DNA from: Ylistrum balloti
Taxonomy: Eukaryota
Direction: 5' to 3'
Assembly: GCF_031769215.1 (NCBI RefSeq)
Contig: NW_026782072.1
Location: forward strand, 1,116,001 to 1,180,000
DNA length: 64,000 bases
Shown here: in pieces, positions 2,543-46,499 of the stretch
Layout: every line of letters starts with the position of its first letter
Position numbering within the stretch: position 1 is the first letter of the stretch
Position numbers and translations under genes: made by a program
The notes under the pieces: generated by a model
The model's database searches: none
What the model saw: the letters and a program-made list of their open reading frames with translations, nothing else
What the model was told of the DNA's origin: nothing

Positions 2543-2944
2543 CAATATGTGTCTAAGCTATGTATAACACAGAAACTGTTACAAATACCAGCAGTATTGT
2601 ATCTGTTAGAACTGATATATATAACATAGAACAGATACCTAACAATATGTGTCTGAGCTATGTATAACACAGAAACTGTTACAAATACCAGCAGTATTGT
2701 ATCTGTTAGAACTGATATATAACATAGAACAGATACCTAACAATATGTGTCTGAGCTATGTATAACACAGAAACTGTTACAAATACCAGCAGTATTGTAT
2801 CTGTTAGAACTGATATATATAACATAGAACAGATACCTAACAATATGTGTCTAAGCTATGTATAACACAGAAACTGTTACAAATACCAGCAGTATTGTAT
2901 CTGTTAGAACTGATATATATAACATAAAACAGATACCTAACAAT
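2543..2944. repeat. ~100-bp tandem repeat, 4 copies
   Basis: CAATATGTGTCT starts at 2543, 2643, 2741 and 2841; the copies are near-identical. Confidence 0.95.
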
Positions 2945-3263
2945 AAACACGGTTTAGTTTTTTGCTTGTAATTACTATTTTAGCGGGAGGGGGTTTGAGG
3001 GCCGAGTGGGATGGAGAGGGACATACCTGCTACGAAAAAAAAATGAAACATACTTACAGCTTATCGAATTTAGACAACAGTATGGGAAAGGGTATGTATT
3101 TTATTCTCATTTACATTTCTCGTTTATTGTTCCTATTTAATGGTCATATCTAATAATTTTAACTAATGGTAAAGTAATACAGACGCACATTATGATTTCA
3201 GCAAACATTTGATCTCACGGTGTTTTATTTGTTTTACAGTGAGCCACGTTAAACCACACGCCA

Positions 3264-4769
3264 ATGGGAGATGAGATGTTTCCTGTGTCCTTCTCTGTAA
3301 TATTCGCGGTATTGATAGCAGCACAATTTCTCCTTGGACTTGTTCTTAATCTTGGAATTCAGATAAGTGCATTATCACAACAAATCTTCCAGGTGAAGAG
3401 TGGCAACTTGTTTGTTCGGACACTAGGCTGGATCGACGCCCTGATATGCTTAACATTGATGCCCTGTACGTTTGTAATAATTGTACTTTTTCCCAGAGTA
3501 AATATCGTACTGTGTGCCGTTCATGAGGGTGTGATATCAATGTCTATATCGGCAACGACGACATGTGTTTTGTTTATATCTCTGGATCGTTACGGGGCCA
3601 TTGTTACTCCAACTTCTCAACGACTTACACACAGAAATGTCCTCTATATTAACATACTAATTGGCGTGGCCTCGGTTTTGGGGTTTTTGTTCCCTTTGGT
3701 GTGTCTCTGCTTCGTCACTTCCATAGACGTTCTGACACAAATGACATCATCGGGAATGTTTTGTCGTGACCTTTTATTGAACGCAAATTCGGTTTACATC
3801 TACGAAGTGTATTTTATCAGTCTGGCGTCAGTCTCTACCATTACAACTGCGATATGCTACGTGAAAATCTACAGAACCGCTAAAAAGCGGATGAAGGCAA
3901 GACAAACGACTGTAATGAATAACGAGGGTGAAAGGACGGGTGGGCTTAGAATTTTGTTTAAGTTTCATGAACGGAAAACGGTTTGGCTTTCACTGGCAAT
4001 TGTTTTCACATTTTTCCTTTCATGGGGACCTTATATTCTCATCGCTATATTACAGATATTGATGCACATAACACTTCCATTAGAGATGTCTAAAATGGGT
4101 CTTCTATCACTTGGGATGATTTCAACAGTTCTACATCCGATATTCTACACATTTCTCAATAGAAGGGAAAGTCGGCGTGATCAAATGAAACGAATAATGA
4201 TAGACGCTGGTAGTGGAGGTCGATTACGTGAATATCGAAGCCAACAGGAAACGACCTCGGCAGTACAAAGCCTTGTACATAAGACGATTTCACAGAGCAT
4301 CTCGATCGGTGTGGGCAATAAACACGACATGGAAATATTTACAACATGCCAAGAACCGCCAAAAACAAGTTCAAGCGAAACTGATGACGAGGTGTTTGAA
4401 CATGAACACAGCCATTTAAGTGTATCACGGAAATTATTTTCAGGAAGAAAAGACAGACACACCTCCTTTACAGATCATAGCGGACGAGAGTCGTCCATAT
4501 CGGAAGCCAGTGGTAAAAAGCTTCCTTTGTCTTTCCGATTGTCTATTGATCTGGATTACGTGAAATTTCAAAGTGAAACTATTGAAACAGAGAACTGTGC
4601 TCCTGAACCCAGCACAACATCACTTAGCGCCGATAGATGTCAAACTAATTCAACACTTGTCGAAACAGCTGACAGTGTAAGTGTTAATATAGAGTCAGAT
4701 GGAAGACGGAAAGCACGGAATAGCCAGGCCAGTGTAGGACAGTATACAAATGCAGCATTCGAACCTTGA
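3264..4769 (+). CDS. GPR22: Class A orphan GPCR, GPR22-like, intronless CDS, 501 aa
   Basis: Seven hydrophobic segments with LDRY, SWGPY and LHPIFY motifs. IDALICLTLMPCTFVI, CAVHEG and LDRYGAIVTPTSQRLT closely resemble vertebrate GPR22 (LDVIICVGCIPLTIVI, CCFHEA, LDRYDISVKPANRILT, FHPLLY) as I recall it. A splice acceptor GTTTTACAG at 3231-3239 implies a 5' UTR intron. Orthology is from memory, not from a search. Confidence 0.85.
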   Translation: MGDEMFPVSFSVIFAVLIAAQFLLGLVLNLGIQISALSQQIFQVKSGNLFVRTLGWIDALICLTLMPCTFVIIVLFPRVNIVLCAVHEGVISMSISATTTCVLFISLDRYGAIVTPTSQRLTHRNVLYINILIGVASVLGFLFPLVCLCFVTSIDVLTQMTSSGMFCRDLLLNANSVYIYEVYFISLASVSTITTAICYVKIYRTAKKRMKARQTTVMNNEGERTGGLRILFKFHERKTVWLSLAIVFTFFLSWGPYILIAILQILMHITLPLEMSKMGLLSLGMISTVLHPIFYTFLNRRESRRDQMKRIMIDAGSGGRLREYRSQQETTSAVQSLVHKTISQSISIGVGNKHDMEIFTTCQEPPKTSSSETDDEVFEHEHSHLSVSRKLFSGRKDRHTSFTDHSGRESSISEASGKKLPLSFRLSIDLDYVKFQSETIETENCAPEPSTTSLSADRCQTNSTLVETADSVSVNIESDGRRKARNSQASVGQYTNAAFEP

Positions 4770-5289
4770 TAAAGCAGTGCATAATTGAAGAAATTTATTT
4801 CATATTAGCTACACGTACCAATGGCAAGTTTTCTGTGAAAATATCATTTTCCATCCAAAGTTTCCATAGATCTGAAAATAACGTTCAATTATGTTTTAGT
4901 TTTGATAAGAATATCCTACCACCTAGTGATAACGTACAAGGAAGTTCCAATTTGGATATGTGATGTCGTTCCCGCACGTTTGATCTATTGATTTTTAAGA
5001 GCCAAAGGAGATGTGAAAAAGGACGTCAAACCAAACAAGCCACGCAATACCTTTAAATAAGTAATGTCTTCAGAGGAGTAGACAAGGAAAGCCAGTGGCT
5101 GAACATCCTCTTGCAAGAATATGAAAGACATTCTCTTAAAACGCGTGTTATCGTAGTGACAACGTTGGCTAAATTGGACTACCAACTACATCATCTTTCT
5201 TTACTGTACGACCCAATCTAGTAGCCACAGAAAAGTCCAGTTTTCGAAATGTCTACCTGGACGCTAAAGTGTCAAAATCCACTCTTAGG

Positions 5290-25926: not shown

Positions 25927-26237
25927 CTATCAATAACAAAGCAAAATTTTTTCTATCCCGTACTTTCCACTGTGTTGTTAAGCGTGTTTCTAATTCGCCA
26001 TCTGATATTTGGATTTGAATAACTAAAAAAGCTTCATCCCAAAATTCAAACCGAAGGTACCTACAAGAAATTCGCTTAAATTTTGTCATTAATAGAATTC
26101 TTTTAAATAAACGCATTGTTAGCAAGCTTTAACGGCGCTAGGAATGAGATGACTTAATTCATAAAATTCTTTGTTATAAGAACCATTATATCCTTTAAAC
26201 AACTAGTTGTTTCTACGTGTTTGTACTAATTTTGGCC

Positions 26238-27938
26238 CTAAAGTTACTCTAAAAGGTTACAAAAGTTACTCTACAAGTTACTCTACAAGTTTACAAAAGT
26301 TACTATACAAGTTACTCTACAAGTTACTCTACAAGGTTACAAAAGTTACTATACAAGTTACTCTACAAGTTACTCTACAAGGTTACAAAAGTTACTCTAC
26401 AAGTTACTATATAAGTTACTCTACAAGGTTACAAAAGTTACTATACAAGTTACTCTACAAGTTACTCTACAAGGTTACAAAAGTTACTCTACAAGGTTAC
26501 AAAAGTTACTCTACAAGTTACTATATAAGTTACTCTACAAGGTTACAAAAGTTACTATACAAGTTACTCTACAAGTTACTCTACAAGGTTACAAAAGTTA
26601 CTCTACAAGGTTACAAAAGTTACTCTACAAGTTACTATATAAGTTACTCTTCAAGCTATTCTACAAGGTTACAAAAGTTACTCTACAAGTTACTCTACAA
26701 GTTACTCTACAAGGTTACAAAAGTTACTCTACAAGTTACTATATAAGTTACTCTACAAGGTTACAAAAGTTACTATACAAGTTACTCTACAAGTTACTCT
26801 TCAAGTTACTCTACAAGTTACTCTTCAAGTTACTCTTGAAGTTACTCTTCAAGTTACTCTACAAGGTTTCAAAAGTTACTCTTCAAGTTACTCTACAAGT
26901 TTACAAAAGTTACTCTACAAGTTACTCTACAAGGTTACAAAAGTTACTATATAAGTTACTCTACAAGTTACTCTACAATGTTACAAAAGTTACTATATAA
27001 GTTACTCTACAAGTTACTCTACAAGTTACTCTTCAAGTTATTCTACAAGGTTACAAAAGTTACTATATAAGTTACTCTACAAGTTACTCTACAAGTTACG
27101 CTTCAAGGTATTCTACAAGGTTACAAAAGTTACTCTACAAGTTACTCTACAAGTTACTCTACAAGTTACTCTTCAAGTTATTCTACAAGGTTACAAAAGT
27201 TACTCTACAAGTTACTATATAAGTTACTCTACATGTTACTCTTCAAGTTACTCTACAAGTTACTCTTCAAGTTACTCTTCAAGTTACTCTACAAGTTACT
27301 CTTCAAGTTACTCTTCAAGTTACTCTACAAGGTTTCAAAAGTTACTCTACAAGTTACTCTACAAGTTTACAAAAGTTACTCTACAAGTTCCTTTACAAGT
27401 TACTCTACAAGTTACTCTTCAAGTTATTCTACAAGGTTACAAAAGTTACTCTACAAGTTACTCTACAAGGTTACAAAAGTTACTCTACAAGTTACTATAT
27501 AAGTTACTCTACAAGGTTACAAAAGTTACTCTACAAGTTACTCTTCAAGTTACCCTACAAGTTACTCTACAAGTTACTCTTCAAGTTACTCTACAAGTTT
27601 ACAAAAGTTACTATACAAGTTACTCTACAAGTTACTCTTCAAGTTACTCTACAAGTTACTCTTCAAGTTACTCTTCAAGTTACTCTACAAGGTTACAAAA
27701 GTTACTATACAAGTTACTCTACAAGTTACTATACAAGTTACTCTACAAGTTACTCTTCAAGTTACTCTACAAGTTACTCTTCAAGTTACTCTACAAGGTT
27801 ACAAAAGTTACTATACAGGTTACTCTACAAGTTACTCTTCAAGTTACTCTACAAGTTACTCTACAAGTTACTCTTCAAGTTACTCTTCAAGTTACTCTAC
27901 AAGGTTACAAAAGTTACTCTACAAGTTACTCTACAAGT
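26238..27938. repeat. Compound 12-bp/10-bp simple satellite
   Basis: CAAGTTACTCTA units irregularly interspersed with CAAGGTTACAA. The ORFs at 26207 and 27233 are artefacts of the repeat. Confidence 0.96.
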
Positions 27939-28479: not shown

Positions 28480-31400
28480 CAAGAAGCAACTACGATATTT
28501 AATTCCAACATTTTCTGTTTGCAGGATACTCATTTTACCGAACAGCAGGAAAATATTATAAGAAATGAATGGGGTTTCCAGTGCTATTTTAATTCCTACA
28601 GGTCAAATGCAAGAGGGGTTGCTGTTCTCTTTAAAAATGACTTTGAATTCAAAGTGCTTAAAGAAAAGAAAGATGGTAGTGGGAATTTTTTTAGGTTTAG
28701 ATATTGAAATTGAGTCTTCTAGAATAACTCTTATTAATATCTATGGTCCAAATAAGGATGACCCTGGTTTTTATGATGTTTTGTCAGAGACTGTTGAAGA
28801 GTTTGATAATAAATATACAATTATTTGTGGAGATTTCAACCTAGTTTTGAATCCAGACTTAGATTATAATAAGAATTACAAAAGGCTTAATAATCCCAAA
28901 GCTAGAGATAGGGTTTTACAAATTATTGATAATCTGGCATTAGTAGACTTTTTTCAGGGACCAGCATGGAGATATAAGAAGGTAAAAGTAATCCCTTAAG
29001 ACAAGCACGGTTAGATTTTTTGTCTTGTATCTGATAATCTTATTTCAAGTATTAACAAGTCAAGTATAGAATCTGGATATTGTTCCGATCATTCATTTCC
29101 TACAATATCATTCAAATTTCATAAATTTGTAGCTGGTAAAGGGGTATGGAAATTTAACAATAGTTTACTACAGGATATGGAGTATTTAGATATAGTAAAA
29201 CAATGTATTACTGAGACAAAAATTCAATACTGTCTTCCAGTCTATAATTTATCAAATATAGGTAGTATTTCTGTTAACGATATTTTGTTCACAATAGATA
29301 ATCAACTGTTTCTTGAAACTTTACTTATGCAAATCAGAGGGAAAACAATATCATACTCATCCTATAAGAAAAAAACAGCAGAATATTAGGGAAGACAATC
29401 TCAAGACAATGATAAAAACACTTGAAGAACAAGAGAATATAGATATTATTGATTTGGAATTAAAGAAGAAAGAATTACAGTCAATAAAAGAAAGGAAAGT
29501 AAGAGGTAGTGTAATAAGATCTCGTTCTAAATGGATCCAAGTAGGGGAAAAACCACGAGAAATCATAAAAGTCCTGGTATTGTTGGTTTTACAGTTGAGT
29601 TCTTCTAGTGTTTTTAGAAGTATTTAGGTAATTTTGTTGTTCGGTCTATAAATTTGGGTTATCATGCTGGTAGTTTATCAATTTTTCAAAGACTAGGTAT
29701 TATTACATGTATCCCTAAGGGAGAAAAACCCAGACATTTTATAAAAAATTGGAGGCCAATTTCTCTGTTAAGTGTAATCTATAAAATAGCATCAGGTACT
29801 ATAGCTGGTCGACTTAAAACCGTTCTAGATAGACTAATAGACAGAGATCAGACAGGATTTTTAGCGGGACGGTATATAGGAGAAACTTGACTTGTTTATG
29901 ATGTTATGCAATATGCAGAAGAAAAGGATATTCCAGGCATGTTTTTAATGATAGACTTTGAAAAAGCGTTTGATTCGGTCTCTTGGATTTTTATTGAAAA
30001 AGTATTACATTTTCTGGGTTTTGGAAACTGTATAATTAATTGGTTTAAAGTTTTACATAATAATGTTAGTGCTACCATTAATCAGGAAGGGAACTTATCT
30101 TCATTTTTTCCTATAAAAAGAGGTTGTCGTCAAGGTGATCCAATTGCGCCATATATTTTCATTCTCTGTGCAGAAATTTTAGCCATTAGAGTAAGACACA
30201 ACCATAAAATCAAAGGTATTAATAACTGTCCCATTCTTCTGTCGCAGTATGCCGATGATGCATCACTTGCACTCCATGGTAACGAATTATCACTGCAAGA
30301 ATCAATCAAAGAGCATAATTCCTATGCAAGAATGTCAGGAAATAAATATTTCAAAAACTCAGATAGTTTGGATAGGTAGTAAGAAATATAGCACTGAGAA
30401 ATTTCTTCCAGAACTAAATTTACAATGGGGTAAAAATCACTTTACACTTTTTGGGATTGAATTCAATGTCAACTTGCGCAAGATACCCAAATTAAACTTT
30501 GATAAGAAACTAACAAAACTCAAATCACTTATTACTACACGGAAAAGAAGAATTTTAACACCGATAGGTAAAATGAACATAATCAGATCAACACTAATTT
30601 CACAACTTAATTACTTATTCATTGCACTGCCAAATCCAGATGACAAATTCCTTTCAGAACTTAACTCCATGTTATATGAGTTTTTGTGATAGTAAAAGAG
30701 ACAAAATTAGAAGGGATATTGTAATTCAGGATTACATTACTGGTTGGATCAAAATGGTAAATGTTAAAGCATTTATAGATTCACTTAAATTAAGTTGGAT
30801 CAGAAGGGTTTTTCAAAGTTCGTCAAAATGGCAAGCTATTTTTAAAACATATGTAAATATAGATTTATTAGCTAACTGTGGCACAGACTATATTCAGTTT
30901 TTTTAAAAATAAATGTAAAAATAAATTTTGGATTGATGTTTTAAAAGCCTGTCAAAATTTGCATGCTGCTAGTGATGGAAATATAGATAACAATGAAGTT
31001 TACTTGAAAACCCCTTTATGGTACAACAATAAAATAACTATAGACAGAAAATCTGTATTCATCAAAGACTGGTATGACAGAGGAGTTATGATAACAGATG
31101 ATCTGATAAAAGATCATCATTCTGGTGGATTTTATACTTTCCATGAATTCACTCAAGTATATCAGGTACAGGCTAATTTTCTTCAATATCATAGTGTTCT
31201 TTCTGCAATCAAGAAATATAACTTTCCATGTTCAAAAATTTTACTTCCAACTATTCCTTTACACTTAGAATTATTTTTAAGAATGTCTAAGGGTTCTAAA
31301 CACTATTATAAGATTCTTATAAAAAAAACAATGTAGTACCTTCAGGTCAGAAAAAATGGAATAACACTTTTAATATAAGTAATTCCACTTGGCATCAGAT

Positions 31401-32039
31401 ATTCAAACTTCCTTTTCTGGTCACTAAAAATACTAAACTTCAATGGTTTCAGTGTAGAATTAATCATCATATTCTGACTGCAAATTCCTTCCTGTTCAAA
31501 GCACGTCTAGTGGTATCTCCTTTGTGTATCCTTTGTAATTCTGAAACTGAAACAACTATTGTCAGGAGGTCCAAAATCTTGGTTGTTAGATATTCTTACT
31601 ATTCCTTTTAATTTTAACAAAGAATCTTATCTCTTTGGATTTCTTACGCAAAATTTGAATAACAGTAAGATTGTTAATGAAATACTTCTTATTATTAAAC
31701 ATTACATTTACAAAATGCGATGTCTTCATAAATCTTTGAATATAAATGCATTAGTAAACACAATTAAGGATAACCATAATGCTCAGAAGTATACAGCGGT
31801 AAGTAAAGGTGATGCTGTTAAAGAATGGAAAAAAAAGGGAAAACTTGTTAGTCTATAATTTGTATATGTTCTATGATTATGATTAAATATAGATAGCGCT
31901 TGACATTCATTTTTATCTTATCTATTTTTCTCTCAATTCCCCTGGCCTTGGGAAATGTTGATGATGATGTACATGGCATGCATAATAATGATGATAATGA
32001 TAATGATGTACATGGCATGCATAATAATGGTAATGATGG

Positions 32040-32083
<44 letters not shown>

Positions 32084-32359
32084 TATGGCATGCATGATGA
32101 TGTATATGGCATGGATGATGACGATGAAATTGATGATGATAATGATGTACATGGCATGGATGATAATGATGATGTACATGACATGCATGATGATAATGAT
32201 GAAGAGGGAGATGATGTACATGGCACGCATGATGAGGAGAAGGAGCGTGATGATGATGATGATGATGATGATGGTGATGATGGTGATGTACATGGCATTG
32301 ATGTTGATGAGGATGATAATGATGTACATGGCATGGACGACGACGACGACGACGACGAC

Positions 32360-32414
<55 letters not shown>

Positions 32415-32523
32415 TATCAGCAACTGTTATTCTATAATATATATGAATGTGTGTGAAAGTTTTGTGTGGTGATGTATTGTTGTTATGTTTCTGTAATTTT
32501 AAAAAAATCTGAGGAAAAAAAAC
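28480..32523 (+). mobile_element. Degenerate L1/Tx1-clade LINE: ORF2 (APE + RT + Cys-rich end) and 3' UTR
   Basis: APE motifs FCLQDTHF, INIYGPN and ICGDFN. RT motifs KSPG, NWRPISLL, IDFEKAFDSV, RGCRQGDP and QYADD. CILCNSETE near 31525. Many frameshifts and stops; an internal deletion joins WIQVGEKP to NHKSPG at ~29555. A-rich tail at ~32500-32523. Confidence 0.92.
31873..32437 (+). other. (GAT)n/GATGTACATGGCATG compound repeat readable as signal peptide + Asp-rich DVHGM-repeat protein (interrupted)
   Basis: Reads MIMIKYR*RLTFIFILSIFLSIPLALG-NVDDDVHGMH... with one in-frame TAG (31894-31896) and a 2-nt loss (GATGTA[CA]TGG) near 32086. The repeat is certain; coding status is not. Confidence 0.35.
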
Positions 32524-34842: not shown

Positions 34843-37800
34843 TTACCACAATCCCGGAAAGAACCTGCCATGGTAGTTGAATGGAATCGTAGTGGGCAGA
34901 TATGCCTTGTTGATCAATGTCATTGTCTTCGGATCTACAATTCCAAGATAGGACAACTCTCGCTCACCATCCAAAACTACTAAAAGCAGCACGCCATCAT
35001 CTTCCGATTTCGCTTCAGGCGCAGGCAGAAACCATACTTCAGTCGGGTAATGATGAGGAATTTGGAACATTTTGGTTTCAGTCTTCCCGCATACGTCCTT
35101 TTTTACGATTCCCGTGTGGCTAAAACCTTCACCATTCCAGTTGAATATGACACCGTATACAAAGCAATACGGCCTTGATCTGTAGTTTTCGTTGATGCTT
35201 GGAAGTTCCATATTCATCGCGTCCGGGTAATCGTAATGTGTAATGGTTTTGTTATCCATGTTTATTGTATATCTTCTTAGTTTGGATATGAGAGTCATTG
35301 ACTTCCTCTCGGTTGCGTTTAATACAGATGGGAAGTTTAATTTCTTAAAGAAATACGGATTAGGTTGAACGGGAATATCGACCGTTAATTTACTGCCTAC
35401 TTCATAAGCATTGGCATGATGCAAAGCGAAAACTGTGTCAGTCTCAAAGGTTTCTACCTTTCCAGTCGGAATATTAACAACGTAGACTTTTGCCTTTTCT
35501 TCAGCCTTCCATTCCATCCCAGCTGCAGCATATCCATTTTCCGCCATTGTCATGAAATTTTGATAGTAGGGATGCCCGATGAATATCACATGATTTTCCG
35601 TTACTGCAAACGAATGCATGTACGGTGCAGAATCTAGACGCCATTCAGCAATAACCTCGTGATCCTCGGCGCCTTTGGTCCTGATAACGGTAATTTTGTC
35701 CTGGACGACGCCCGGAATCATTCCAGCTCCACCTAGATAATCAATATACACTCCTGGCTTTCCATATTCCTGAAGTGGGTGGGCAGACGACAATAGACTT
35801 ATGACATCGTCAGTTTTGGAATGATTTGAGGTCGGAATCTTCGCGTTAATCAGCCTTACTGTGTCCAGTGTCGGGAGGTCAATTTCATAGCACTTCCATA
35901 AATCTGTCACTGCGACAAATGTATTGGAATAATTGTAAAAGTTCACGTTCATGTTATCCATCGCATTGACCATGGCTTCTACTTTTTGTTCGTCATCATA
36001 CGGAGGGATGGTTACACCAAAGTTAAGATAAGGGGCAATGTCATTCAGCTCCACTGAGGTTTTGTAGAAAGAAGACTGGATAAATTTTGTGGAAAATAGA
36101 CACGAACCGTCTCCCGGAAACTTCCAACTCATTAACTTGGCGTAACCATCAAGAGCCTGTGTGAAATTACGTTTTCCCATCTCAAACTGTCCTGGACCAT
36201 TTCGTACCTGAAGAGAAAATACAATATGTCAAACAAAGTATAAAATGGTGTTAACTGTATCTAACACATTAGTAGTCAGTTAACGTAATGAAAAGCTGAG
36301 ATACACGATACGTTATGTTAATTAATAAACAGAGACCAAATAAAGTTTGTCATAAAAAAACGCATATGAATTATCTAATATAAAAACAAAAACTTATATT
36401 TAAGTACGATCAAAACATTTCAGGTTCAATAATAGCGCTAAATCTGTTTGTTAAGAGTGAAGTATGGACATTGTGTTTTCTCCATACGTTCTTACAATTG
36501 AAAAATAAAATGATGTAACGGTAATTTAAGAAGCATCGTCAAGAAACGAAATCCACGCTTTGACGTCATTCAGTATTGAAATGTGTGTAATGTCTTTGAT
36601 ATTGGTGCCAGCATATCTCATTATCTAGATTTCAATATTGATTTCGACCAATTTTGATTTCCTCTGTCGCCACCGAGCTTTCAGCAATTACGGCCCTTAG
36701 TATAATTGATGAGTTCTAGAAGTAGAAAACAGCTTTATGGTGGATTTCTTTTATTTGACACCACTGTAGATGTAGACTAACGTTAGATTTAAAGGTGCTA
36801 TTCACTTGTTTGTCTTATGTATAACCTGAGAATTGTAAGTATATAACACTGACGAAAACTTATAATTTGACATGTATTAGATCATCATGGTAGACTTTTA
36901 TGCATGTCTTTGTCCCAAAGACACACAACACGTGTGTGCATCTCTTGAAAAACAAATTTAGTGATGCTTAGACCTAAGATTTGAAGCTTAGGAGATGACA
37001 GGAAAATTCCAATTGATCGAAAGACCAAATCTAGAAGGGGATATGCACAAGTCTCAAAATTAAATAGATTGTGTTAAAAGGACACAGCCTGTGACATTTT
37101 GTTAGATCAGATTTCCACAACTACAAATAACTGATAAAAACACAAAACAACACCATAAAAACGAATGAAGGTTAAAATCTGATATTTTTGCAAACATTTA
37201 TAGTTCTAAGGAAAATTTTACAGATACATGTTTTCAGTTATGAAATTAAACACGCTGAGGATTTGAATTTAACTAAAATTTAATTAAAAATAAATTGTAC
37301 AGAAATACAAAAGTAGCCTTAACAGATTGGTTGATGGTATTAGTTGCAAGTTAAATGCATATATACTTAGTGTTTATACTAACATGTGTATAATATAAAT
37401 GATAAATTACATATCGTGATTTTTCGGTCAGTGCCCATGATGGAATATATTCAATAGCTGTCAAAATACAATCAATCAGATAAACTTTTGATTCAATTAT
37501 TTAATTTTTGCAACCTGATTCACATTATTTTCTAACAACACGTATCACTTACAAGATGAAGTTAACATATCATTAAAACGATGTTGATAAACCTGAATCC
37601 CTCGAGAAGAAATAGTCCTGGCCATCCATACATTTATTTTTCAACAAGTAAGGCTATATGGTTGTGCAAAATAGACAAGTTAATATCTGCTCAAGTTGGA
37701 CTTAATATCTGCTTGTGTGAATGTTGTCGTCTGCTAAATAATTGTTTAATGACTGAAAATTAAATCTGCAACAAGACGAAGAACTGCTTCTTGACAATGT

Positions 37801-39307
37801 TTTGACGCCATGGATACCAGGACAACTGAGAAAGGTTACAAAACAATGACAATTTAAAGATGGCTGCCTCTCAGTTCGGAGGGAAGCGGAAGACGACCGT
37901 AGAACACAGTATAAACGTTATTCTTCCGCTAGGCTGTCGAAGAATTTTCATAATTTGTAAACTGTATTGTCAAAATTATTTTTACAGCTTTTACAAACTG
38001 TTTTGTATATTTGTGTATCGCATAATCGTATTTTGCCTCAGTTATACTGTTTTATCCTCTTATTAAAAATGCCGGACAATATTTTTAATTCATTAGACCT
38101 GCACAAATTCTGGTTACTGCAGACTCGGATTTGTTCAAATATTAAAAACAAATGATTTTGAATGAAATATACTGTTGCTCTTGGGGCAAATTTAATGAAC
38201 TGCGAAGCATTTTATGTTGAATTTATTTCAACAGCAAATCAATTCATCATCCCATGAAATTAATAAAAACCAGATTAAATTCTTAAATATCAAATTTAAC
38301 ACAAATTTTGAATTAGATAGAACAGAGCCAAATGAATTAAACTGCATTATCCATGAAATCAATAAAAACAAGATTAAATTCTTAAATATCTAATTTAATA
38401 CAAATTTTGAATTAGGTAGAAAAGAGCCAAATAATGAATTAAACTGCATTATAAAGCTTTGTTTTCCTTCTATAACTTGTCAGTGCCCAGGACATAAAAT
38501 TTTCTAACCTATGAGGTGACATAGAAACATTAGAGGTTATCTTAAAGATATTTCGAAATCAAGTTGTGGAGATGTACCAGCTATGTAATTAAATAAGTTT
38601 CGTTATTTTCATATTATGATAATTTCTCCTGTTCATCGTTCACAAACTATCATTCCTTTATACCTGTTTAGTGGAACTAGACCGGAATCAGTTCCTGTGT
38701 TTAAGTAGAATAGTGTTTACAAGTGTTGACGGTAAAATCTTCAATTTTTGTGGGAGATTTATTTTGGAGGATTTCATTTGTAATTAACAAATTCATATGA
38801 CCATGCAATGTTGAATTAGCATAAGTGGATTTATCAAGTTATGTTTATCCATAAAAGCAAGACTTTACAGTAAATGAATCAAAGTTTAACTTTTTTATTT
38901 TTGATTTTAATTTGTTTTTATTTGAACACGTAAACGTTTTCCTAATTTTAATTACATATTTGCAATTCATGATAGTAATAATTATTATTATTAATTTCCT
39001 GAACGTAAATGTATGTTTAAGTGTATCATGTGTCTGAATAGTTCATATATAAATATGGTTATCTATTTACTACTATTTACCATGATTTTGACAGGGAAAA
39101 ATAATCAAACAAAACTCTTACCAGAGTCCCGTAAATCCAGCTAGGTAGAGGTTTTTCGAACTTTATTGGATAATCCTCAAATATTTTCGTGTTTGTCTTC
39201 CACCAGTATTGGAAACCTGGGGCGTCATCATCGCCTGACCCGCCTCTTGTGAGGGGGGCTACTGTCACCACTAGTAGCAGGGTGAAGGAGAGAAGCATGT
39301 TCCTCAT
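34843..39307 (-). CDS. Carotenoid cleavage oxygenase (RPE65/BCO superfamily, BCO-like), 2 exons, 516 aa, N-terminal signal-peptide-like segment
   Basis: Exon 1 39307-39122 (ends WIYGTL|gtaaga) and exon 2 36207-34843 (ttcag|VRNGPG), phase 0. All four Fe-ligand His contexts are present: SAHP, YMHSF, LHHANAYE and YHGRF. Second-shell acidic residues occur in MELPSIN, YPTEVWF and AVTDLW. Confidence 0.93.
38252..38450. repeat. ~98-bp tandem duplication in the oxygenase intron
   Basis: CCATGAAAT..AATAAAAAC..GATTAAATTCTTAAATATC...ATGAATTAAACTGCATTAT occurs twice. Confidence 0.85.
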
Positions 39308-43897: not shown

Positions 43898-46499
43898 TCA
43901 CTCAAATACTATATCTACATCGTATCCTTGCATTTTTTCTTTATAAATAAGATCAAAATGTTGGCTTTGTTCTGGCGTAAACCATCTCTTCCAGTCCCCT
44001 ATCTCACCTAAAGAAGAAAATAGATAACAAGAACAAACGTCGATGGATAAATAGTAAAATAGGTTCGACTATGGGGATTAGAAAAATCAAATGATTAGTT
44101 TGATACTCAAATAATTATTACGAAAAGATGGGTCACTATTTATAAAAGGACTTCATATGGGTTTATTACCAAGTCGAAATCTCCCTCGACGATTTTGAGG
44201 AGGAATATCAAGGAAAAATACCTTTCTGTGAAATTACTTTATATCTTGATAATTAATTCGTAAAAACGTTTCTATGTAAAATTATGTAACTTTGAAATCG
44301 ATCACAATATACTCATAGGTAAGATGAAACTGGTCAATACTTACTTCAAAATGTTTACCGATCTTTTAAATCATATTTTGAAATCTTTCTCGCATATTAG
44401 CTTATTAGCACTCACGTTATACTTCTTACTTGAAACAATATATATTTATGATAGATCTATACATGATACTGACCTTTCCTGTACACAGGAAGAACCCCGT
44501 CTTCACTAAAATCTTTGAATTCCTGTATGCTTTTTGATTCTTCCTTGTGCTTTTGTTTCATTGTTGTGAAGTCCGTGCAAGCCATCACCTTTTTGCAGAA
44601 ATCCTTATCGCTAGTAATTCCAAGAAATTCCTGAACTCTTTCCAGATTTGAAAGTGTATTCTGCAACATTGATTAGTAATGTGAAACTGTACTCTATCAA
44701 TCGCTCTGAATACATGTTCGATGCAGATATATCTATAGTGATGAATGAAAAATGTCAGTATTCAAGAACCTATAAGAAGTGTCTGTATAGCTATAATGAT
44801 AAATGAAAGTAAAAGCAAACATTCTATGTGTATTGCTAGCTAATCAGATAAAAAGAAACAGGCCATGCATCTTAGTAGACGTGACCAATAGACTAGTTAT
44901 ACTGTTGTAAGTATGGCACATATAACTTTTTTACAACACCACGTGGAAATATTGTTACAAGGAAAATTGTACAAATTACACACAAGTGAATATCACCTTT
45001 AAATACAACCTTTTAATCCAAAAGAAATTAAAAAAATTGATAACTTAGAAAAATAGATATCAAGAGATTTTTTTATGCATCTCATATTCCGTTAATCTTA
45101 TTTGAGTAGTAATATCTATATTGATTATTTACCTACTATGGATATCACAGGTCTACTTACATGGTCTTATCTTTGTCTTCCTACTTACCCTTTTCAGATC
45201 TTCATAGTAAAGCATAAGAGTCCTCATCTTTGGGTACTTCTTTTTAATATCCAGCCAGTCTTTGATGACAGCAAACCAATTTCCAAAGAAAACTACAATA
45301 TAATGTAAATAGTTCTTTATCAATTTAATGGCATTTGATATTGTTATACCCGTATGCCCGTTAGTTTATGTATATAGTGCACATTACAAAATCTTAAATG
45401 GACATTATCAAAAAAGTGTCATTGTTCAGATAACATAATATCTTACGAGTAAATATCAGTTGCCCATGTTTTACGTATAATATTATATTTGTTGTGTGTC
45501 AGTTGCCTGTACTCTTAATGACATACTTTCATAGCAAGAAGTTTGTCATACATTCTGATAATGCAGGAATGTATTATAATGTGCTTGACATAATCGTGCA
45601 TTGACTATTATAAAGCGTTATGATAATGGAATAACATACATTCATCCTTTAGAAAGAAATTTAGAAATCCATCGAAGCCCCCAGTGAATCCAACATTCTT
45701 TAAAGAGGTCAAAAAGCAATAGTAAGAGACAGCAGCGTCTTTAGGATTCCGGATTATGTTGACAACCGTGCCAATGCCGTTCTTCATGTCATCAGGAAGC
45801 AAATCTAACTCTAGATGAGTTGCAAACAGCCTTGGAGATTGCATATTGTTTATGACATCAATATCGAAAAACTCCAGATACACCGGAGTACCGGCATATG
45901 TGAGGTTTCCGGTGAGAAACATACGTAATATGTTGTACATCCAGTGTGTTCCTAGAAGATACAAGATATTTAATAATGCATTTTACATAAAGCTTTCCTG
46001 ACAGAATTGTTATAGATCAAATGCTATGTTTTAGAAAAAAGAACGTTGGATGTTTAAGAATTTCAAAAATATATTATCAAATAAAACAGTTATAGGTAAT
46101 ATTTTTAAGTCAAATTGTTTCTGCTAATCAAACATTCCTATTTTTGAAACTATTCAACATGTGGCAAATGGCGTGATGGACAACTCAATCATATGGTGGT
46201 GATTAAAGTGGTAAAGAGTTTTCCGTTCAATTCTGTGCTGTGAATATACACAATGTGTAACAATAGAGTGATCATATTAGCTTCAGGATGCGCCAGCATA
46301 AATACTAAAGGTTCATACCGCATTTGGGGTAAGTATACAGCAACACATCATCCTGTCGACATTTAAGTTGGGCAGTGTTGATTACCAAGTCCCGGATGTT
46401 ACTCGAGATAACGGGAGGAAATACAAAGCCCTTGTATAGTGAATACTGGATGGTATTGCCACGCTCATCCTTTCTTTCTACCTTCTCAATCACATCCAT
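43898..46499 (-). CDS. Cytosolic sulfotransferase (SULT family), 5 coding exons, 297 aa
   Basis: Exons 46499-46319, 45951-45640, 45292-45189, 44660-44474 and 44007-43898; GT-AG with consistent phases (894 nt). Motifs: TYPKCGTHW (5'-PSB loop), ATHL (catalytic His), RNPKDAAVSYY (3'-PB), YYEDLK and RKGEIGDWK. Confidence 0.95.

What the first reader, a model, noticed from the sequence alone, without database searches (positions are those of the whole stretch)
34843..39307. Carotenoid cleavage oxygenase apparently targeted to the secretory pathway
Seen: exon 1 encodes MRNMLLSFTLLLVVTVAPLTRG-GSGDDD, which looks like a signal peptide. The mature part has five N-x-S/T sequons (NFT, NYS, NHS, NAT, NKT) and all four Fe-binding His. 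The PDPCK motif is replaced by IPPYDDEQK, and the RPE65 E148-equivalent appears to be Asp (AVTDLW). Known: vertebrate BCO1, BCO2 and RPE65 are cytosolic, mitochondrial or ER-peripheral without signal peptides; BCO-like proteins lacking PDPCK occur in invertebrates, and one controls muscle carotenoid colour in Yesso scallop. Inference: extracellular or luminal (gut, lysosome, haemolymph) carotenoid cleavage would be unusual chemistry for a Fe(II) enzyme. The 1365-bp uninterrupted exon also differs from the many-exon vertebrate genes.
Basis: partly seen in the sequence, partly recalled or inferred. Interest (0 to 1): 0.72.

Follow-up and report, generated by a model that had tools for sequence, protein, structure and literature searches.

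The report
Scallop secreted-type carotenoid oxygenase (BCOL)
This is an intact two-exon scallop gene for a carotenoid-cleaving iron enzyme that carries a secretion signal, but it belongs to the BCO-like (BCOL) subfamily whose signal peptides, secretion, glycosylation and altered iron-site residues have already been published, so it is a new member of a known kind.

Summary
The minus-strand gene has exon 1 at 39307-39122 and exon 2 at 36207-34843, joined by a GT-AG, phase-0 intron, and encodes 516 aa. The N-terminus is a signal-peptide-like stretch, MRNMLLSFTLLLVVTVAPLTRG. The four Fe-binding His, Asp164 at the RPE65-E148 position, IPPYDDEQK in place of PDPCK, and five sequons are all there.

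The secretory reading is supported, but it is not new. Poliakov et al. 2017 predicted signal peptides across the BCOL clade, molluscs included. Uppal et al. 2020 and 2026 showed that lancelet BCOLg is secreted, N-glycosylated, disulfide-bonded, Glu-to-Asp substituted and lacks PDPCK. BCOLg (9PLV) is this protein's best solved relative (E 2.4e-76), and both disulfide cysteines are conserved.

The signal-peptide exon, the intron position and the long catalytic exon recur in all eight BCOL paralogs of this genome (Ylistrum balloti by inference) and in Argopecten irradians.

A second individual shows only synonymous changes in the coding exons. No RNA data were available for this species. The sequon count is no higher than chance. 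This protein keeps Glu where BCOLg has its second Asp.

Verdict: a real, functional gene and a new member of a known kind.

The parts
39122..39307 (-). Exon 1 coding part (62 codons): start codon, signal peptide, acidic DDD-PGF stretch and the first conserved segment ending ...PLPSWIYGTL
   Evidence: The same exon, ending GTL/GIL|GT, is found upstream of all 7 other paralogs and in both A. irradians genes.
39242..39307 (-). Predicted signal peptide, residues 1-22 (MRNMLLSFTLLLVVTVAPLTRG); likely cleavage after G22 or S24
   Evidence: Heuristic hydrophobicity, charge and -3/-1 analysis. No SignalP was available. Relatives scored as secretory by TargetP in PMC5643517.
36208..39121 (-). Single intron (2914 bp), GT...AG, phase 0, at a position conserved across mollusc BCOL genes
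   Evidence: ORF-called homologs from other molluscs begin with the read-through acceptor '..FQ|IRNG'. Intron SNP density is 11.2/kb against 2.9/kb in exon 2.
34843..36207 (-). Exon 2: uninterrupted 454 codons plus stop, holding almost the whole seven-bladed CCO propeller
   Evidence: Pfam RPE65 E 4e-70. AF2 mean pLDDT 89, TM 0.85 to archaeal NdCCD 6VCF. Best PDB sequence hit is 9PLV BCOLg, E 2.4e-76.
35983..36009 (-). IPPYDDEQK (residues 129-137), in place of the PDPCK palmitoylation motif; no Cys
   Evidence: The region is partly helical in the AF2 model (helix at exon-2 residues 72-81), as reported for BCOLg VDPPF (PMC13734108).
35902..35904 (-). Asp164, the second-shell residue at the RPE65 Glu148 position
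   Evidence: Asp in 105 of 105 aligned homologs. Asp in BCOLg, Glu in NdCCD and NinaB at the same column.
35206..35208 (-). Glu396, at the RPE65 Glu417 position; Glu is kept here, whereas BCOLg has Asp408
   Evidence: alignment. Across homologs Asp 77, Glu 27.
35164..35166 (-). Cys410, equivalent to BCOLg Cys422 (one half of the disulfide)
   Evidence: Aligned; Cys in 104 of 105 homologs.
35089..35091 (-). Cys435, equivalent to BCOLg Cys449 (the other half of the disulfide)
   Evidence: Aligned; Cys in 103 of 105 homologs.
35779..35781 (-). His205, Fe ligand 1. The other three are His260 at 35614-35616, His325 at 35419-35421 and His508 at 34870-34872.
   Evidence: His205, His260 and His325 are His in all 105 aligned homologs; His508 in 104, the other row having a gap. 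Codons checked.
35317..35319 (-). Asn359 (NAT), the best-conserved of the five sequons. The others are N76 at 36166-36168, N154 at 35932-35934, N190 at 35824-35826 and N381 at 35251-35253.
   Evidence: The N359 sequon is shared by 40 of 105 homologs, N76 by 20 of 101, the rest by 12 or fewer.

Best explanation
The gene encodes a member of the BCO-like (BCOL) subfamily of carotenoid cleavage oxygenases.

Inferred steps:
- The product enters the ER through a cleavable N-terminal signal peptide encoded by its own small exon.
- It is probably N-glycosylated and forms a Cys410-Cys435 disulfide.
- It is released as a soluble extracellular or luminal enzyme.
- There a 4-His Fe(II) centre, braced by Asp164, Glu396 and Glu452, cleaves dietary algal carotenoids oxidatively. 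The most likely place is the digestive tract or digestive gland lumen; haemolymph is less likely.

Shown here: an intact, constrained gene; the family assignment; conservation of the signal-peptide exon, the His ligands, the Asp and the Cys pair.

Inferred from the lancelet homolog: actual secretion, glycosylation, disulfide formation and carotenoid cleavage.

Unknown: tissue, substrate and cleavage position.
For: - Fold and family: Pfam RPE65. The best solved relative is BCOLg 9PLV at E 2.4e-76, against NdCCD 3.9e-49, NinaB 2e-28 and RPE65 1e-17. AF2 pLDDT 89 with a CCO fold.
- BCOL hallmarks: no PDPCK, Asp at the E148 position in 105 of 105 homologs, the Cys pair in 103-104 of 105, and an H325-E396 spacing of 71 residues against 80 in BCOLg and 104 in RPE65, so there is no 'metazoan loop'.
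- Signal peptide: the sequence itself. SP-like N-termini occur in 34 of 41 exon-1-bearing homologs from molluscs, with further ones seen by eye in an annelid and a nemertean. All 8 paralogs of this genome have the same exon 1.
- Spliced transcript contigs of a related scallop-type paralog carry the signal peptide and catalytic ORF in one frame.
- Gene integrity: a second individual's DNA shows 4 exon-2 SNPs, all synonymous, none in exon 1 and no coding indels. dN to the A. irradians orthologs is 0.09-0.10 with dS saturated; omega between the A. irradians tandem copies is 0.135.
- Literature: TargetP signal peptides for mollusc BCOLs (PMC5643517); BCOLg secreted from HEK293F cells and not palmitoylated (PMC7221588); BCOLg crystal structure with 4 N-glycans, a C422-C449 disulfide, beta-carotene cleaved to retinal, and gut transcripts (PMC13734108).
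Against: - No RNA run for this species could be found, so the junction, the first exon and the tissue of expression are unverified here.
- No trained signal-peptide predictor was available; only a heuristic was used.
- This protein lacks the two best-conserved family sequons (columns at Q95 and Q111), and its sequon count is at chance level.
- It keeps Glu at the E417 position, unlike BCOLg.
- The experimental evidence comes from a lancelet protein only about 36-38% identical.
- Some annotated homologs lack an SP-like start (7 of 41). One of these was shown here to be a mis-chosen start codon; two more are listed in Noticed in passing as possible non-secreted members.
Confidence: 0.8

Rival explanations
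1. The hydrophobic N-terminus is an uncleaved signal anchor. The enzyme would then be a type II membrane protein, with its propeller in the ER/Golgi/lysosomal lumen or on the cell surface, rather than a soluble secreted protein.
For: No cleavage-site predictor could be run. Poliakov 2017 itself first read the peptides as possibly indicating trafficking to ER membranes. The substrates are lipophilic, so staying at a membrane would make sense.
Against: The uncharged stretch is 18 residues (3-20) with a hydrophobic core of about 15 that ends in a Pro. It is followed by T-R-G, which fits the -3/-1 rule, and then by an acidic stretch, as in classic cleaved signal peptides. BCOLg, with a similar N-terminus, is recovered as a soluble monomer from culture medium (PMC13734108). 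There is no KDEL-type C-terminus and no other hydrophobic segment.
Confidence: 0.1
2. The gene model is wrong at its 5' end. Exon 1 as read would not be used, or would be used only in a minor isoform, and the main product would be a cytosolic CCO starting at Met72 (MGKRNFT...) or from another upstream exon.
For: There is no RNA evidence in this species. The longest simple ORF starts at an internal ATG within exon 2 (34843-36180).
Against: Starting at Met72 would delete the conserved first strand (PLPSWIYGTLVRNGPGQFE), which is present in all full-length relatives and in Pfam positions before 30. Exon 1 and its splice site are conserved in position and phase in 8 paralogs and in RefSeq models of A. 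irradians. Exon 1 has no SNP in a second individual. Transcript contigs of a relative join the two exons.
Confidence: 0.05
3. The gene is an inactive or decaying duplicate in an expanded family: intact by chance and without a physiological role.
For: The family is expanded, with 8 BCOL loci in this genome. This orthogroup was found only in Ylistrum and Argopecten among the named scallops in the hit list. One paralog (L011) lacks an in-frame ATG in exon 1.
Against: The 516-codon frame is open. All catalytic residues are invariant. All 4 coding SNPs are synonymous, and exon SNP density is a quarter of the intron's (Fisher P 0.006). dN is 0.09 with saturated dS over the Ylistrum-Argopecten split.
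Confidence: 0.05

Closest known systems
Lancelet BCOLg (Branchiostoma floridae; PDB 9PLV; Uppal et al. 2026 preprint PMC13734108; Uppal et al. 2020 PMC7221588)
   Same: It is the best solved-structure relative (E 2.4e-76, aligned over 452 of 454 exon-2 residues). Shared features: an N-terminal signal peptide of about 22 residues, no PDPCK and no Cys in that loop, Asp at the RPE65-E148 position, both disulfide cysteines (C422/C449 = C410/C435), Glu at the E469 position, and a short blade-IV loop.
   Different: It is only about 36-38% identical. BCOLg has Asp at the E417 position, while the scallop protein keeps Glu396. None of BCOLg's four glycosylated Asn is matched exactly: N383 lies 3 residues from the scallop N381 sequon, and the N98, N110 and N438 columns carry no sequon here. 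The lancelet gene has at least 3 exons; the scallop gene has 2. Activity, secretion and tissue are untested for the scallop protein.
Mollusc BCOL proteins (Poliakov et al. 2017, PMC5643517) and scallop 'BCO-like' genes such as PyBCO-like 1 of Yesso scallop
   Same: Same clade. It is 40-49% identical to BCO-like proteins of Pecten, Mizuhopecten, Argopecten, Pinctada, Lottia and others, and 84-87% identical to two tandem A. irradians genes. It shares the signal-peptide exon, the acidic 'DDD-PGF' start of the mature protein, the intron position and the long catalytic exon.
   Different: It belongs to an orthogroup seen here only in Ylistrum (one copy) and Argopecten (two copies). It lacks the commonest family sequon (the GNGS column, 72 of 105 homologs). 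It is in the minority (27 of 105) that keep Glu at the E417 position. Which orthogroup holds PyBCO-like 1 was not determined.
Canonical metazoan CCOs (BCO1, BCO2, RPE65, NinaB)
   Same: Seven-bladed propeller, 4-His Fe(II) centre, acidic second shell, EDDG motif.
   Different: The canonical enzymes have no signal peptide, being cytosolic, mitochondrial or ER-peripheral. They carry the PDPCK palmitoylation motif, Glu at all three second-shell sites and a roughly 30-residue 'metazoan loop'. Their genes have many exons: 12 in scallop PyBCO2 (PMC11012205), and the two canonical loci of this genome match only exon by exon. Their PDB E-values are 1e-17 to 2e-28, against 2.4e-76 for BCOLg.
Archaeal NdCCD (Nitrosotalea devanaterra, PDB 6VCF)
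   Same: It is the second-best sequence hit (E 3.9e-49) and the best structural match in the Foldseek library (TM 0.85). It has a compact propeller without the metazoan loop.
   Different: It is a cytoplasmic prokaryotic enzyme with no signal peptide, Glu at the E148 position and a DPC motif, and it lacks the Cys pair.

Membership tests
BCOL (BCO-like) subfamily of carotenoid cleavage oxygenases | RPE65/CCO seven-bladed propeller with four Fe-binding His | tested here: met
   Pfam PF03055 E 4e-70. His205/260/325 are His in all 105 homologs and His508 in 104, the other row having a gap. AF2 pLDDT 89; Foldseek TM 0.80-0.85 to CCO structures.
BCOL (BCO-like) subfamily of carotenoid cleavage oxygenases | Closer to BCOL members than to canonical BCO/RPE65/NinaB | tested here: met
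   phmmer against PDB: BCOLg 2.4e-76, NinaB 2.1e-28, C. elegans BCMO 3.7e-22, RPE65 1.3e-17. The protein nests within mollusc BCO-like sequences in a tree rooted on a Branchiostoma homolog. No canonical outgroup sequences were available for a full superfamily tree.
BCOL (BCO-like) subfamily of carotenoid cleavage oxygenases | N-terminal secretory signal peptide | tested here: met
   Heuristic only: one Arg, an 18-residue uncharged stretch (residues 3-20) with a hydrophobic core, and T-R-G|G. The feature is conserved in orthologs and in all paralogs. SignalP/TargetP were not available.
BCOL (BCO-like) subfamily of carotenoid cleavage oxygenases | Absence of the PDPCK palmitoylation motif | tested here: met
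   IPPYDDEQK at 129-137, with no Cys. Relatives have V(D/S)PPF-type sequences.
BCOL (BCO-like) subfamily of carotenoid cleavage oxygenases | Asp in place of the second-shell Glu equivalent to RPE65 E148 | tested here: met
   Asp164; Asp in 105 of 105 homologs and in BCOLg; Glu in NdCCD and NinaB at that column.
BCOL (BCO-like) subfamily of carotenoid cleavage oxygenases | Asp in place of the second-shell Glu equivalent to RPE65 E417 (reported for BCOLg and several BCOLs; not universal) | tested here: not met
   Glu396 is retained. Across homologs Asp 77, Glu 27, so this is a variable trait and not a defining one.
BCOL (BCO-like) subfamily of carotenoid cleavage oxygenases | Conserved Cys pair that forms the BCOLg C422-C449 disulfide | tested here: met
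   Cys410 and Cys435 align to C422 and C449 and are conserved in 104 and 103 of 105 homologs. Disulfide formation itself cannot be tested with these tools.
BCOL (BCO-like) subfamily of carotenoid cleavage oxygenases | Lacks the roughly 30-residue 'metazoan loop' (RPE65 371-400) | tested here: met
   The spacing from the third His to the E417-equivalent is 71 residues here, 80 in BCOLg and 104 in RPE65 (RPE65 numbering from PMC13734108).
BCOL (BCO-like) subfamily of carotenoid cleavage oxygenases | Actual secretion and N-glycosylation | not testable with these tools
   Five sequons are present, but the count is at chance level. Only N359 is moderately conserved (40 of 105).
BCOL (BCO-like) subfamily of carotenoid cleavage oxygenases | Carotenoid cleavage activity | not testable with these tools
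   Shown for lancelet BCOLs only (PMC5643517, PMC13734108).
Canonical metazoan BCO1/BCO2/RPE65/NinaB | PDPCK motif with palmitoylatable Cys, and three second-shell Glu | tested here: not met
   No PDPCK; Asp164 at the first Glu position.

The most novel reading that the evidence does not exclude
This Ylistrum/Argopecten-specific BCOL orthogroup may not be a gut digestive enzyme. It could be a circulating (haemolymph or tissue-fluid) carotenoid-clearing enzyme with its own substrate preference. That would help set which tissues of scallops stay white or turn orange, extending the PyBCO-like 1 colour story to an extracellular mechanism. A lesser new point is gene architecture: a 'signal-peptide exon plus one long catalytic exon' structure is conserved across mollusc BCOL genes, and I found it described in neither of the two BCOL papers I searched for it (PMC5643517, PMC13734108).
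Probability: 0.15. Interest if true: 0.5.

Novelty: new member of a known kind. Interest (0 to 1): 0.25.

Why it matters
It shows that a tool-less reader recovered, from raw DNA, every hallmark that defines the published secreted BCOL subfamily.

It also adds some small facts:
- An apparently unlisted eighth BCOL gene in this scallop.
- A conserved two-exon layout, in which the signal peptide has its own exon.
- Clade-wide invariance of the Asp at the E148 position and of the disulfide cysteines across 105 lophotrochozoan and lancelet homologs.
- A minority state (Glu kept at the E417 position) that could serve as a natural control for the Glu/Asp second-shell question raised by the BCOLg structure.

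For aquaculture, scallop BCOL genes are candidate colour genes. Knowing that they are extracellular enzymes bears on where carotenoids are degraded.

Tried and rejected
- RNA evidence. Two run searches, one with the whole gene and one with exon 2 alone, found only a single run. Laying it showed a DNA run of another individual, with a contig continuous through the intron. The junction and the tissue therefore could not be checked.
- Sequon enrichment as evidence for secretion. Rejected for this protein (5 observed against 3.4 expected, P 0.25). The family as a whole shows only a modest excess (4.8 against 3.9).
- Disulfide geometry in the AF2 model. The tool returns no coordinates, so only sequence-level conservation could be used.
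- Foldseek against PDB. That library copy predates 9PLV, so the structural top hit is NdCCD and not BCOLg. The sequence search of the newer PDB copy finds 9PLV.
- Literature on PyBCO-like 1 localisation and tissue. Two searches found only papers that cite it. The original paper is not in the library.
- A mitochondrial presequence reading. Rejected: there are only two Arg, no amphipathic pattern and a long uncharged hydrophobic core.
- Horizontal origin from an NdCCD-like prokaryotic gene. I considered this because of the single long exon and the high NdCCD score. I did not pursue it, because NdCCD is known to resemble metazoan CCOs in general and published trees place BCOL as an old animal clade. 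I did not test this reading.
- The large protein-representatives search was not used, because the family was not in doubt.
Full report
**What is there.** On the minus strand a two-exon gene spans 39307-34843.
- Exon 1 (39307-39122) starts at the first ATG after an in-frame stop and holds 62 codons. It ends ...GGG ACT CTG | GTAAGA.
- Exon 2 starts after ...TTCTCTTCAG at 36207 and runs 454 codons to a stop at 34843-34845.
- The splice is phase 0 and restores the family motif ...PLPSWIYGTL|VRNGPGQFEMG.
- The product is 516 aa. Exon 2 alone matches Pfam RPE65 over profile positions 30-469 at E 4e-70.

[quoted passage not shown] Five proteins labelled Ylistrum balloti match paralogous loci of the window's own assembly at 100%, on contigs of exactly the lengths recorded for those proteins. 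The window is therefore, by inference, from the saucer scallop Ylistrum balloti. No 100% match to the window's own protein was in the hit list, so this gene may be missing from the public protein set.

**Is the N-terminus a signal peptide?** No trained predictor was available, so I used a simple test.
- There is one basic residue (R2), then an 18-residue uncharged stretch whose best 8-residue window has a mean Kyte-Doolittle value of 3.1. A helix-breaking Pro follows, then T-R-G (small residues at -3 and -1), then an acidic stretch.
- It is the only 19-residue window in the protein above 1.6, and there is no KDEL-type end.
- A laxer version of this pattern arises in about 2% of shuffles of the protein, so the single sequence is only suggestive.

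The weight comes from recurrence:
- Among homologs whose models include exon 1, 34 of 41 have an SP-like start. Further ones missed by my regular expression do too, including an annelid and a nemertean.
- All seven other BCOL loci in this genome have an upstream exon 1. It ends at the same codon (GTL, GTI or GIL | GTRAGT or GTATGT) and begins with a hydrophobic N-terminus.
- For one paralog (P0032), the annotated non-SP start is simply the second ATG. The upstream in-frame ATG gives MEHQIFTNFVVIIFVT....
- The two A. irradians orthologs have divergent but equally hydrophobic N-termini followed by the same DDD-APGF stretch, which is the usual way signal peptides evolve.

**Is the gene model right and the gene alive?** No RNA run for this species was found. 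The one holder is a DNA run of another individual, with a 5.7-kb contig continuous from the 3' flank through exon 2 into the intron.
- That run is still informative. It shows 4 differences in exon 2, all synonymous (F505, E246, T194, N117), none in exon 1 and no coding indels. Against that are 24 SNPs and several indels in 2.1 kb of intron: 2.9 against 11.2 per kb, Fisher P 0.006.
- Against the A. irradians orthologs, dN is 0.09-0.10 with dS saturated. Between the two A. irradians tandem copies omega is 0.135.
- Both A. irradians genes have the same two-exon structure with GT-AG introns of about 3.2 and 4.1 kb.
- The neighbourhood is syntenic. Sulfotransferase genes lie upstream of the CCO gene(s) in A. 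irradians, and a Sulfotransfer_1 exon lies at 45608-45964 (minus strand) in the window.
- Many ORF-called homologs from other molluscs begin with a read-through acceptor ('...FQ|IRNGLG'), which shows that the intron position is conserved across the phylum.
- Two Logan contigs of 2.3-2.5 kb from RNA-type assemblies of a relative carry the signal peptide and the catalytic domain in one 517-codon frame. They are spliced transcripts of a paralogous gene.

**What family.** Among solved structures the best sequence match by far is 9PLV, 'Beta-carotene oxygenase like g (BCOLg)' of the lancelet (E 2.4e-76). It is followed by archaeal NdCCD (3.9e-49), NinaB (2.1e-28), Synechocystis ACO (about 2e-22), C. 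elegans BCMO (3.7e-22) and RPE65 (1.3e-17). The alignments and a 105-sequence alignment show the following:

| Feature | This protein | Across 105 homologs | Reference proteins |
|---|---|---|---|
| Four Fe-binding His | His205, 260, 325, 508 | His in 105, 105, 105 and 104 (one gap) | - |
| RPE65-E148 position | Asp164 | Asp in 105 | Asp in BCOLg; Glu in NdCCD and NinaB |
| RPE65-E417 position | Glu396 | Asp in 77, Glu in 27 | Asp in BCOLg |
| RPE65-E469 position | Glu452 | Glu in 104 | Glu in BCOLg and NdCCD |
| Disulfide pair | Cys410, Cys435 | Cys in 104 and 103 | BCOLg Cys422, Cys449 |
| Other Cys | Cys98, Cys168 | not conserved | - |
| PDPCK motif | IPPYDDEQK | V/I-x-P-P-F/Y type | PDPCK in canonical metazoan CCOs |
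| Third His to E417-equivalent | 71 residues | - | 80 in BCOLg, 104 in RPE65 |

- The short His-to-Glu spacing means the 'metazoan loop' is absent.
- An AF2 model of exon 2 is confident (pLDDT 89, pTM 0.89) and matches CCO structures at TM 0.80-0.85.
- In a quick ML tree the protein groups with the two A. irradians proteins (100). It is sister to two unnamed ENA sequences, inside a pectinid expansion with at least five orthogroups.

**What the literature already says.**
- Poliakov et al. 2017 (PMC5643517) defined the BCOL clade (lancelet, mollusc, nematode). Their Table 1 gives TargetP secretory predictions for Crassostrea, Aplysia, Octopus, Lottia, Capitella and lancelet members.
- Uppal et al. 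2020 (PMC7221588) showed that BCOLg is not palmitoylated and is partly secreted from HEK293F cells. They speak of 'the secreted BCOL subfamily'.
- The preprint of 30 Oct 2026 (PMC13734108) gives the 2.4 A structure. It reports signal peptide 1-22, four resolved N-glycans, a Cys422-Cys449 disulfide, Asp at two of the three second-shell Glu positions ('a general feature of BCOL proteins'), VDPPF for PDPCK, no metazoan loop, symmetric beta-carotene cleavage and gut transcripts. It proposes that BCOLs are secreted into the gut to cleave algal carotenoids.

**What is slightly new here.**
- (a) The sequon count is not evidence: 5 observed against 3.4 +/- 1.7 in shuffles. This protein lacks the two commonest family sequon columns (at Q95, 72 of 105; at Q111, 31 of 105, the column of BCOLg N110). 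It shares the N359 column with 40 of 105 homologs.
- (b) It belongs to the minority that keep Glu at the E417 position.
- (c) The long uninterrupted exon is a BCOL family trait in this genome. Eight loci match Pfam positions 30-468 in a single open frame. The two canonical CCO loci match only in small exon pieces, and scallop BCO2 is reported to have 12 exons (PMC11012205).
- (d) The two BCOL papers I searched for it (PMC5643517, PMC13734108) say nothing about introns or gene structure. The conserved 'signal-peptide exon plus catalytic exon' layout may therefore be undescribed.

**Mechanism, with its status.**
- Shown: an intact, constrained BCOL gene with all catalytic and family-specific residues.
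- Inferred from homology with BCOLg: co-translational ER entry, signal-peptide cleavage near residue 22-24, N-glycosylation at some of the five sequons, a Cys410-Cys435 disulfide, release as a soluble enzyme, and Fe(II)/O2-dependent cleavage of carotenoid double bonds.
- Not known: tissue, substrate and cleavage position. I favour the digestive tract or digestive gland lumen by analogy. Haemolymph is an open alternative, given the role of a scallop BCO-like gene in muscle colour; that role is cited in PMC11012205, and the original paper was not available.

**Verdict.** This is a new member of a known kind, of low to moderate interest.

Noticed in passing
window 34843-39307 versus the public protein set: No protein identical to this gene's product appeared among the hits (best 87%, A. 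irradians), although five other Ylistrum balloti BCO-like proteins match the same assembly at 100%. The gene may be unannotated, or absent from the collection.
   Followed up: partly
L011 (G000:C167:1063566-1073565), exon 1 at about 2886-3047: This paralog's exon 1 is hydrophobic (..CFVSLCLLIILAVPFLILYHVCASVKVAQSDNDAPGF..) but has no in-frame ATG after the preceding stop. It may have another upstream exon, a non-ATG start, or be a decaying copy.
   Followed up: no
L014 (G000:C85:2977454-2987453), about 4987-5180: The annotated protein P0032 starts at a second ATG (MKILTAEITADPDPGF). An upstream in-frame ATG gives MEHQIFTNFVVIIFVTMKIL..., which restores a signal-peptide-like start, so the annotated start codon is likely mis-chosen.
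   Followed up: partly
G000:C167:991728-1087491: Four BCOL paralogs sit within about 96 kb on one contig, all on the minus strand: a tandem cluster. Two are only 4.7 kb apart with nearly identical signal peptides.
   Followed up: partly
window 45608-45964 (-) and L016:1-8541: A Sulfotransfer_1 exon lies upstream of the BCOL gene. In A. irradians two sulfotransferase genes sit in the same relative position, so the synteny is conserved. A. irradians has a tandem duplicate of the BCOL gene, which this window lacks.
   Followed up: partly
window 3264-4769 (+): An intronless 501-aa ORF with a rhodopsin-family 7TM domain (Pfam 7tm_1, E 1e-21).
   Followed up: no
window 28565-31336 (+): A run of ORFs, one of which (29906-30379) holds a reverse-transcriptase domain (RVT_1, E 1e-15); the first ORF (28565-28999) has no Pfam match. 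This is a degraded non-LTR retroelement downstream of the BCOL gene.
   Followed up: no
window 31848-32456 and 26207-26746: Low-complexity and tandem-repeat tracts that produce long spurious ORFs on both strands (His/Ser/Ile/Met/Asp runs; an LQKLLYKLLYK repeat).
   Followed up: no
window 38264-38631 and 36792-36975: Inside the intron the DNA run's contig depth jumps from about 10 to 48-240, and the contigs break with loose ends. These are interspersed repeat copies within the intron.
   Followed up: no
P0040, P0050 (pectinid 'retinoid isomerohydrolase-like' orthogroup): Some members of one pectinid BCOL orthogroup start with hydrophilic N-termini (for example MAQPSYEKEVGAVRSQETGK...), while their orthologs P0041, P0042 and P0045 have SP-like starts. 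These are either start-codon mis-annotations or real non-secreted isoforms.
   Followed up: no
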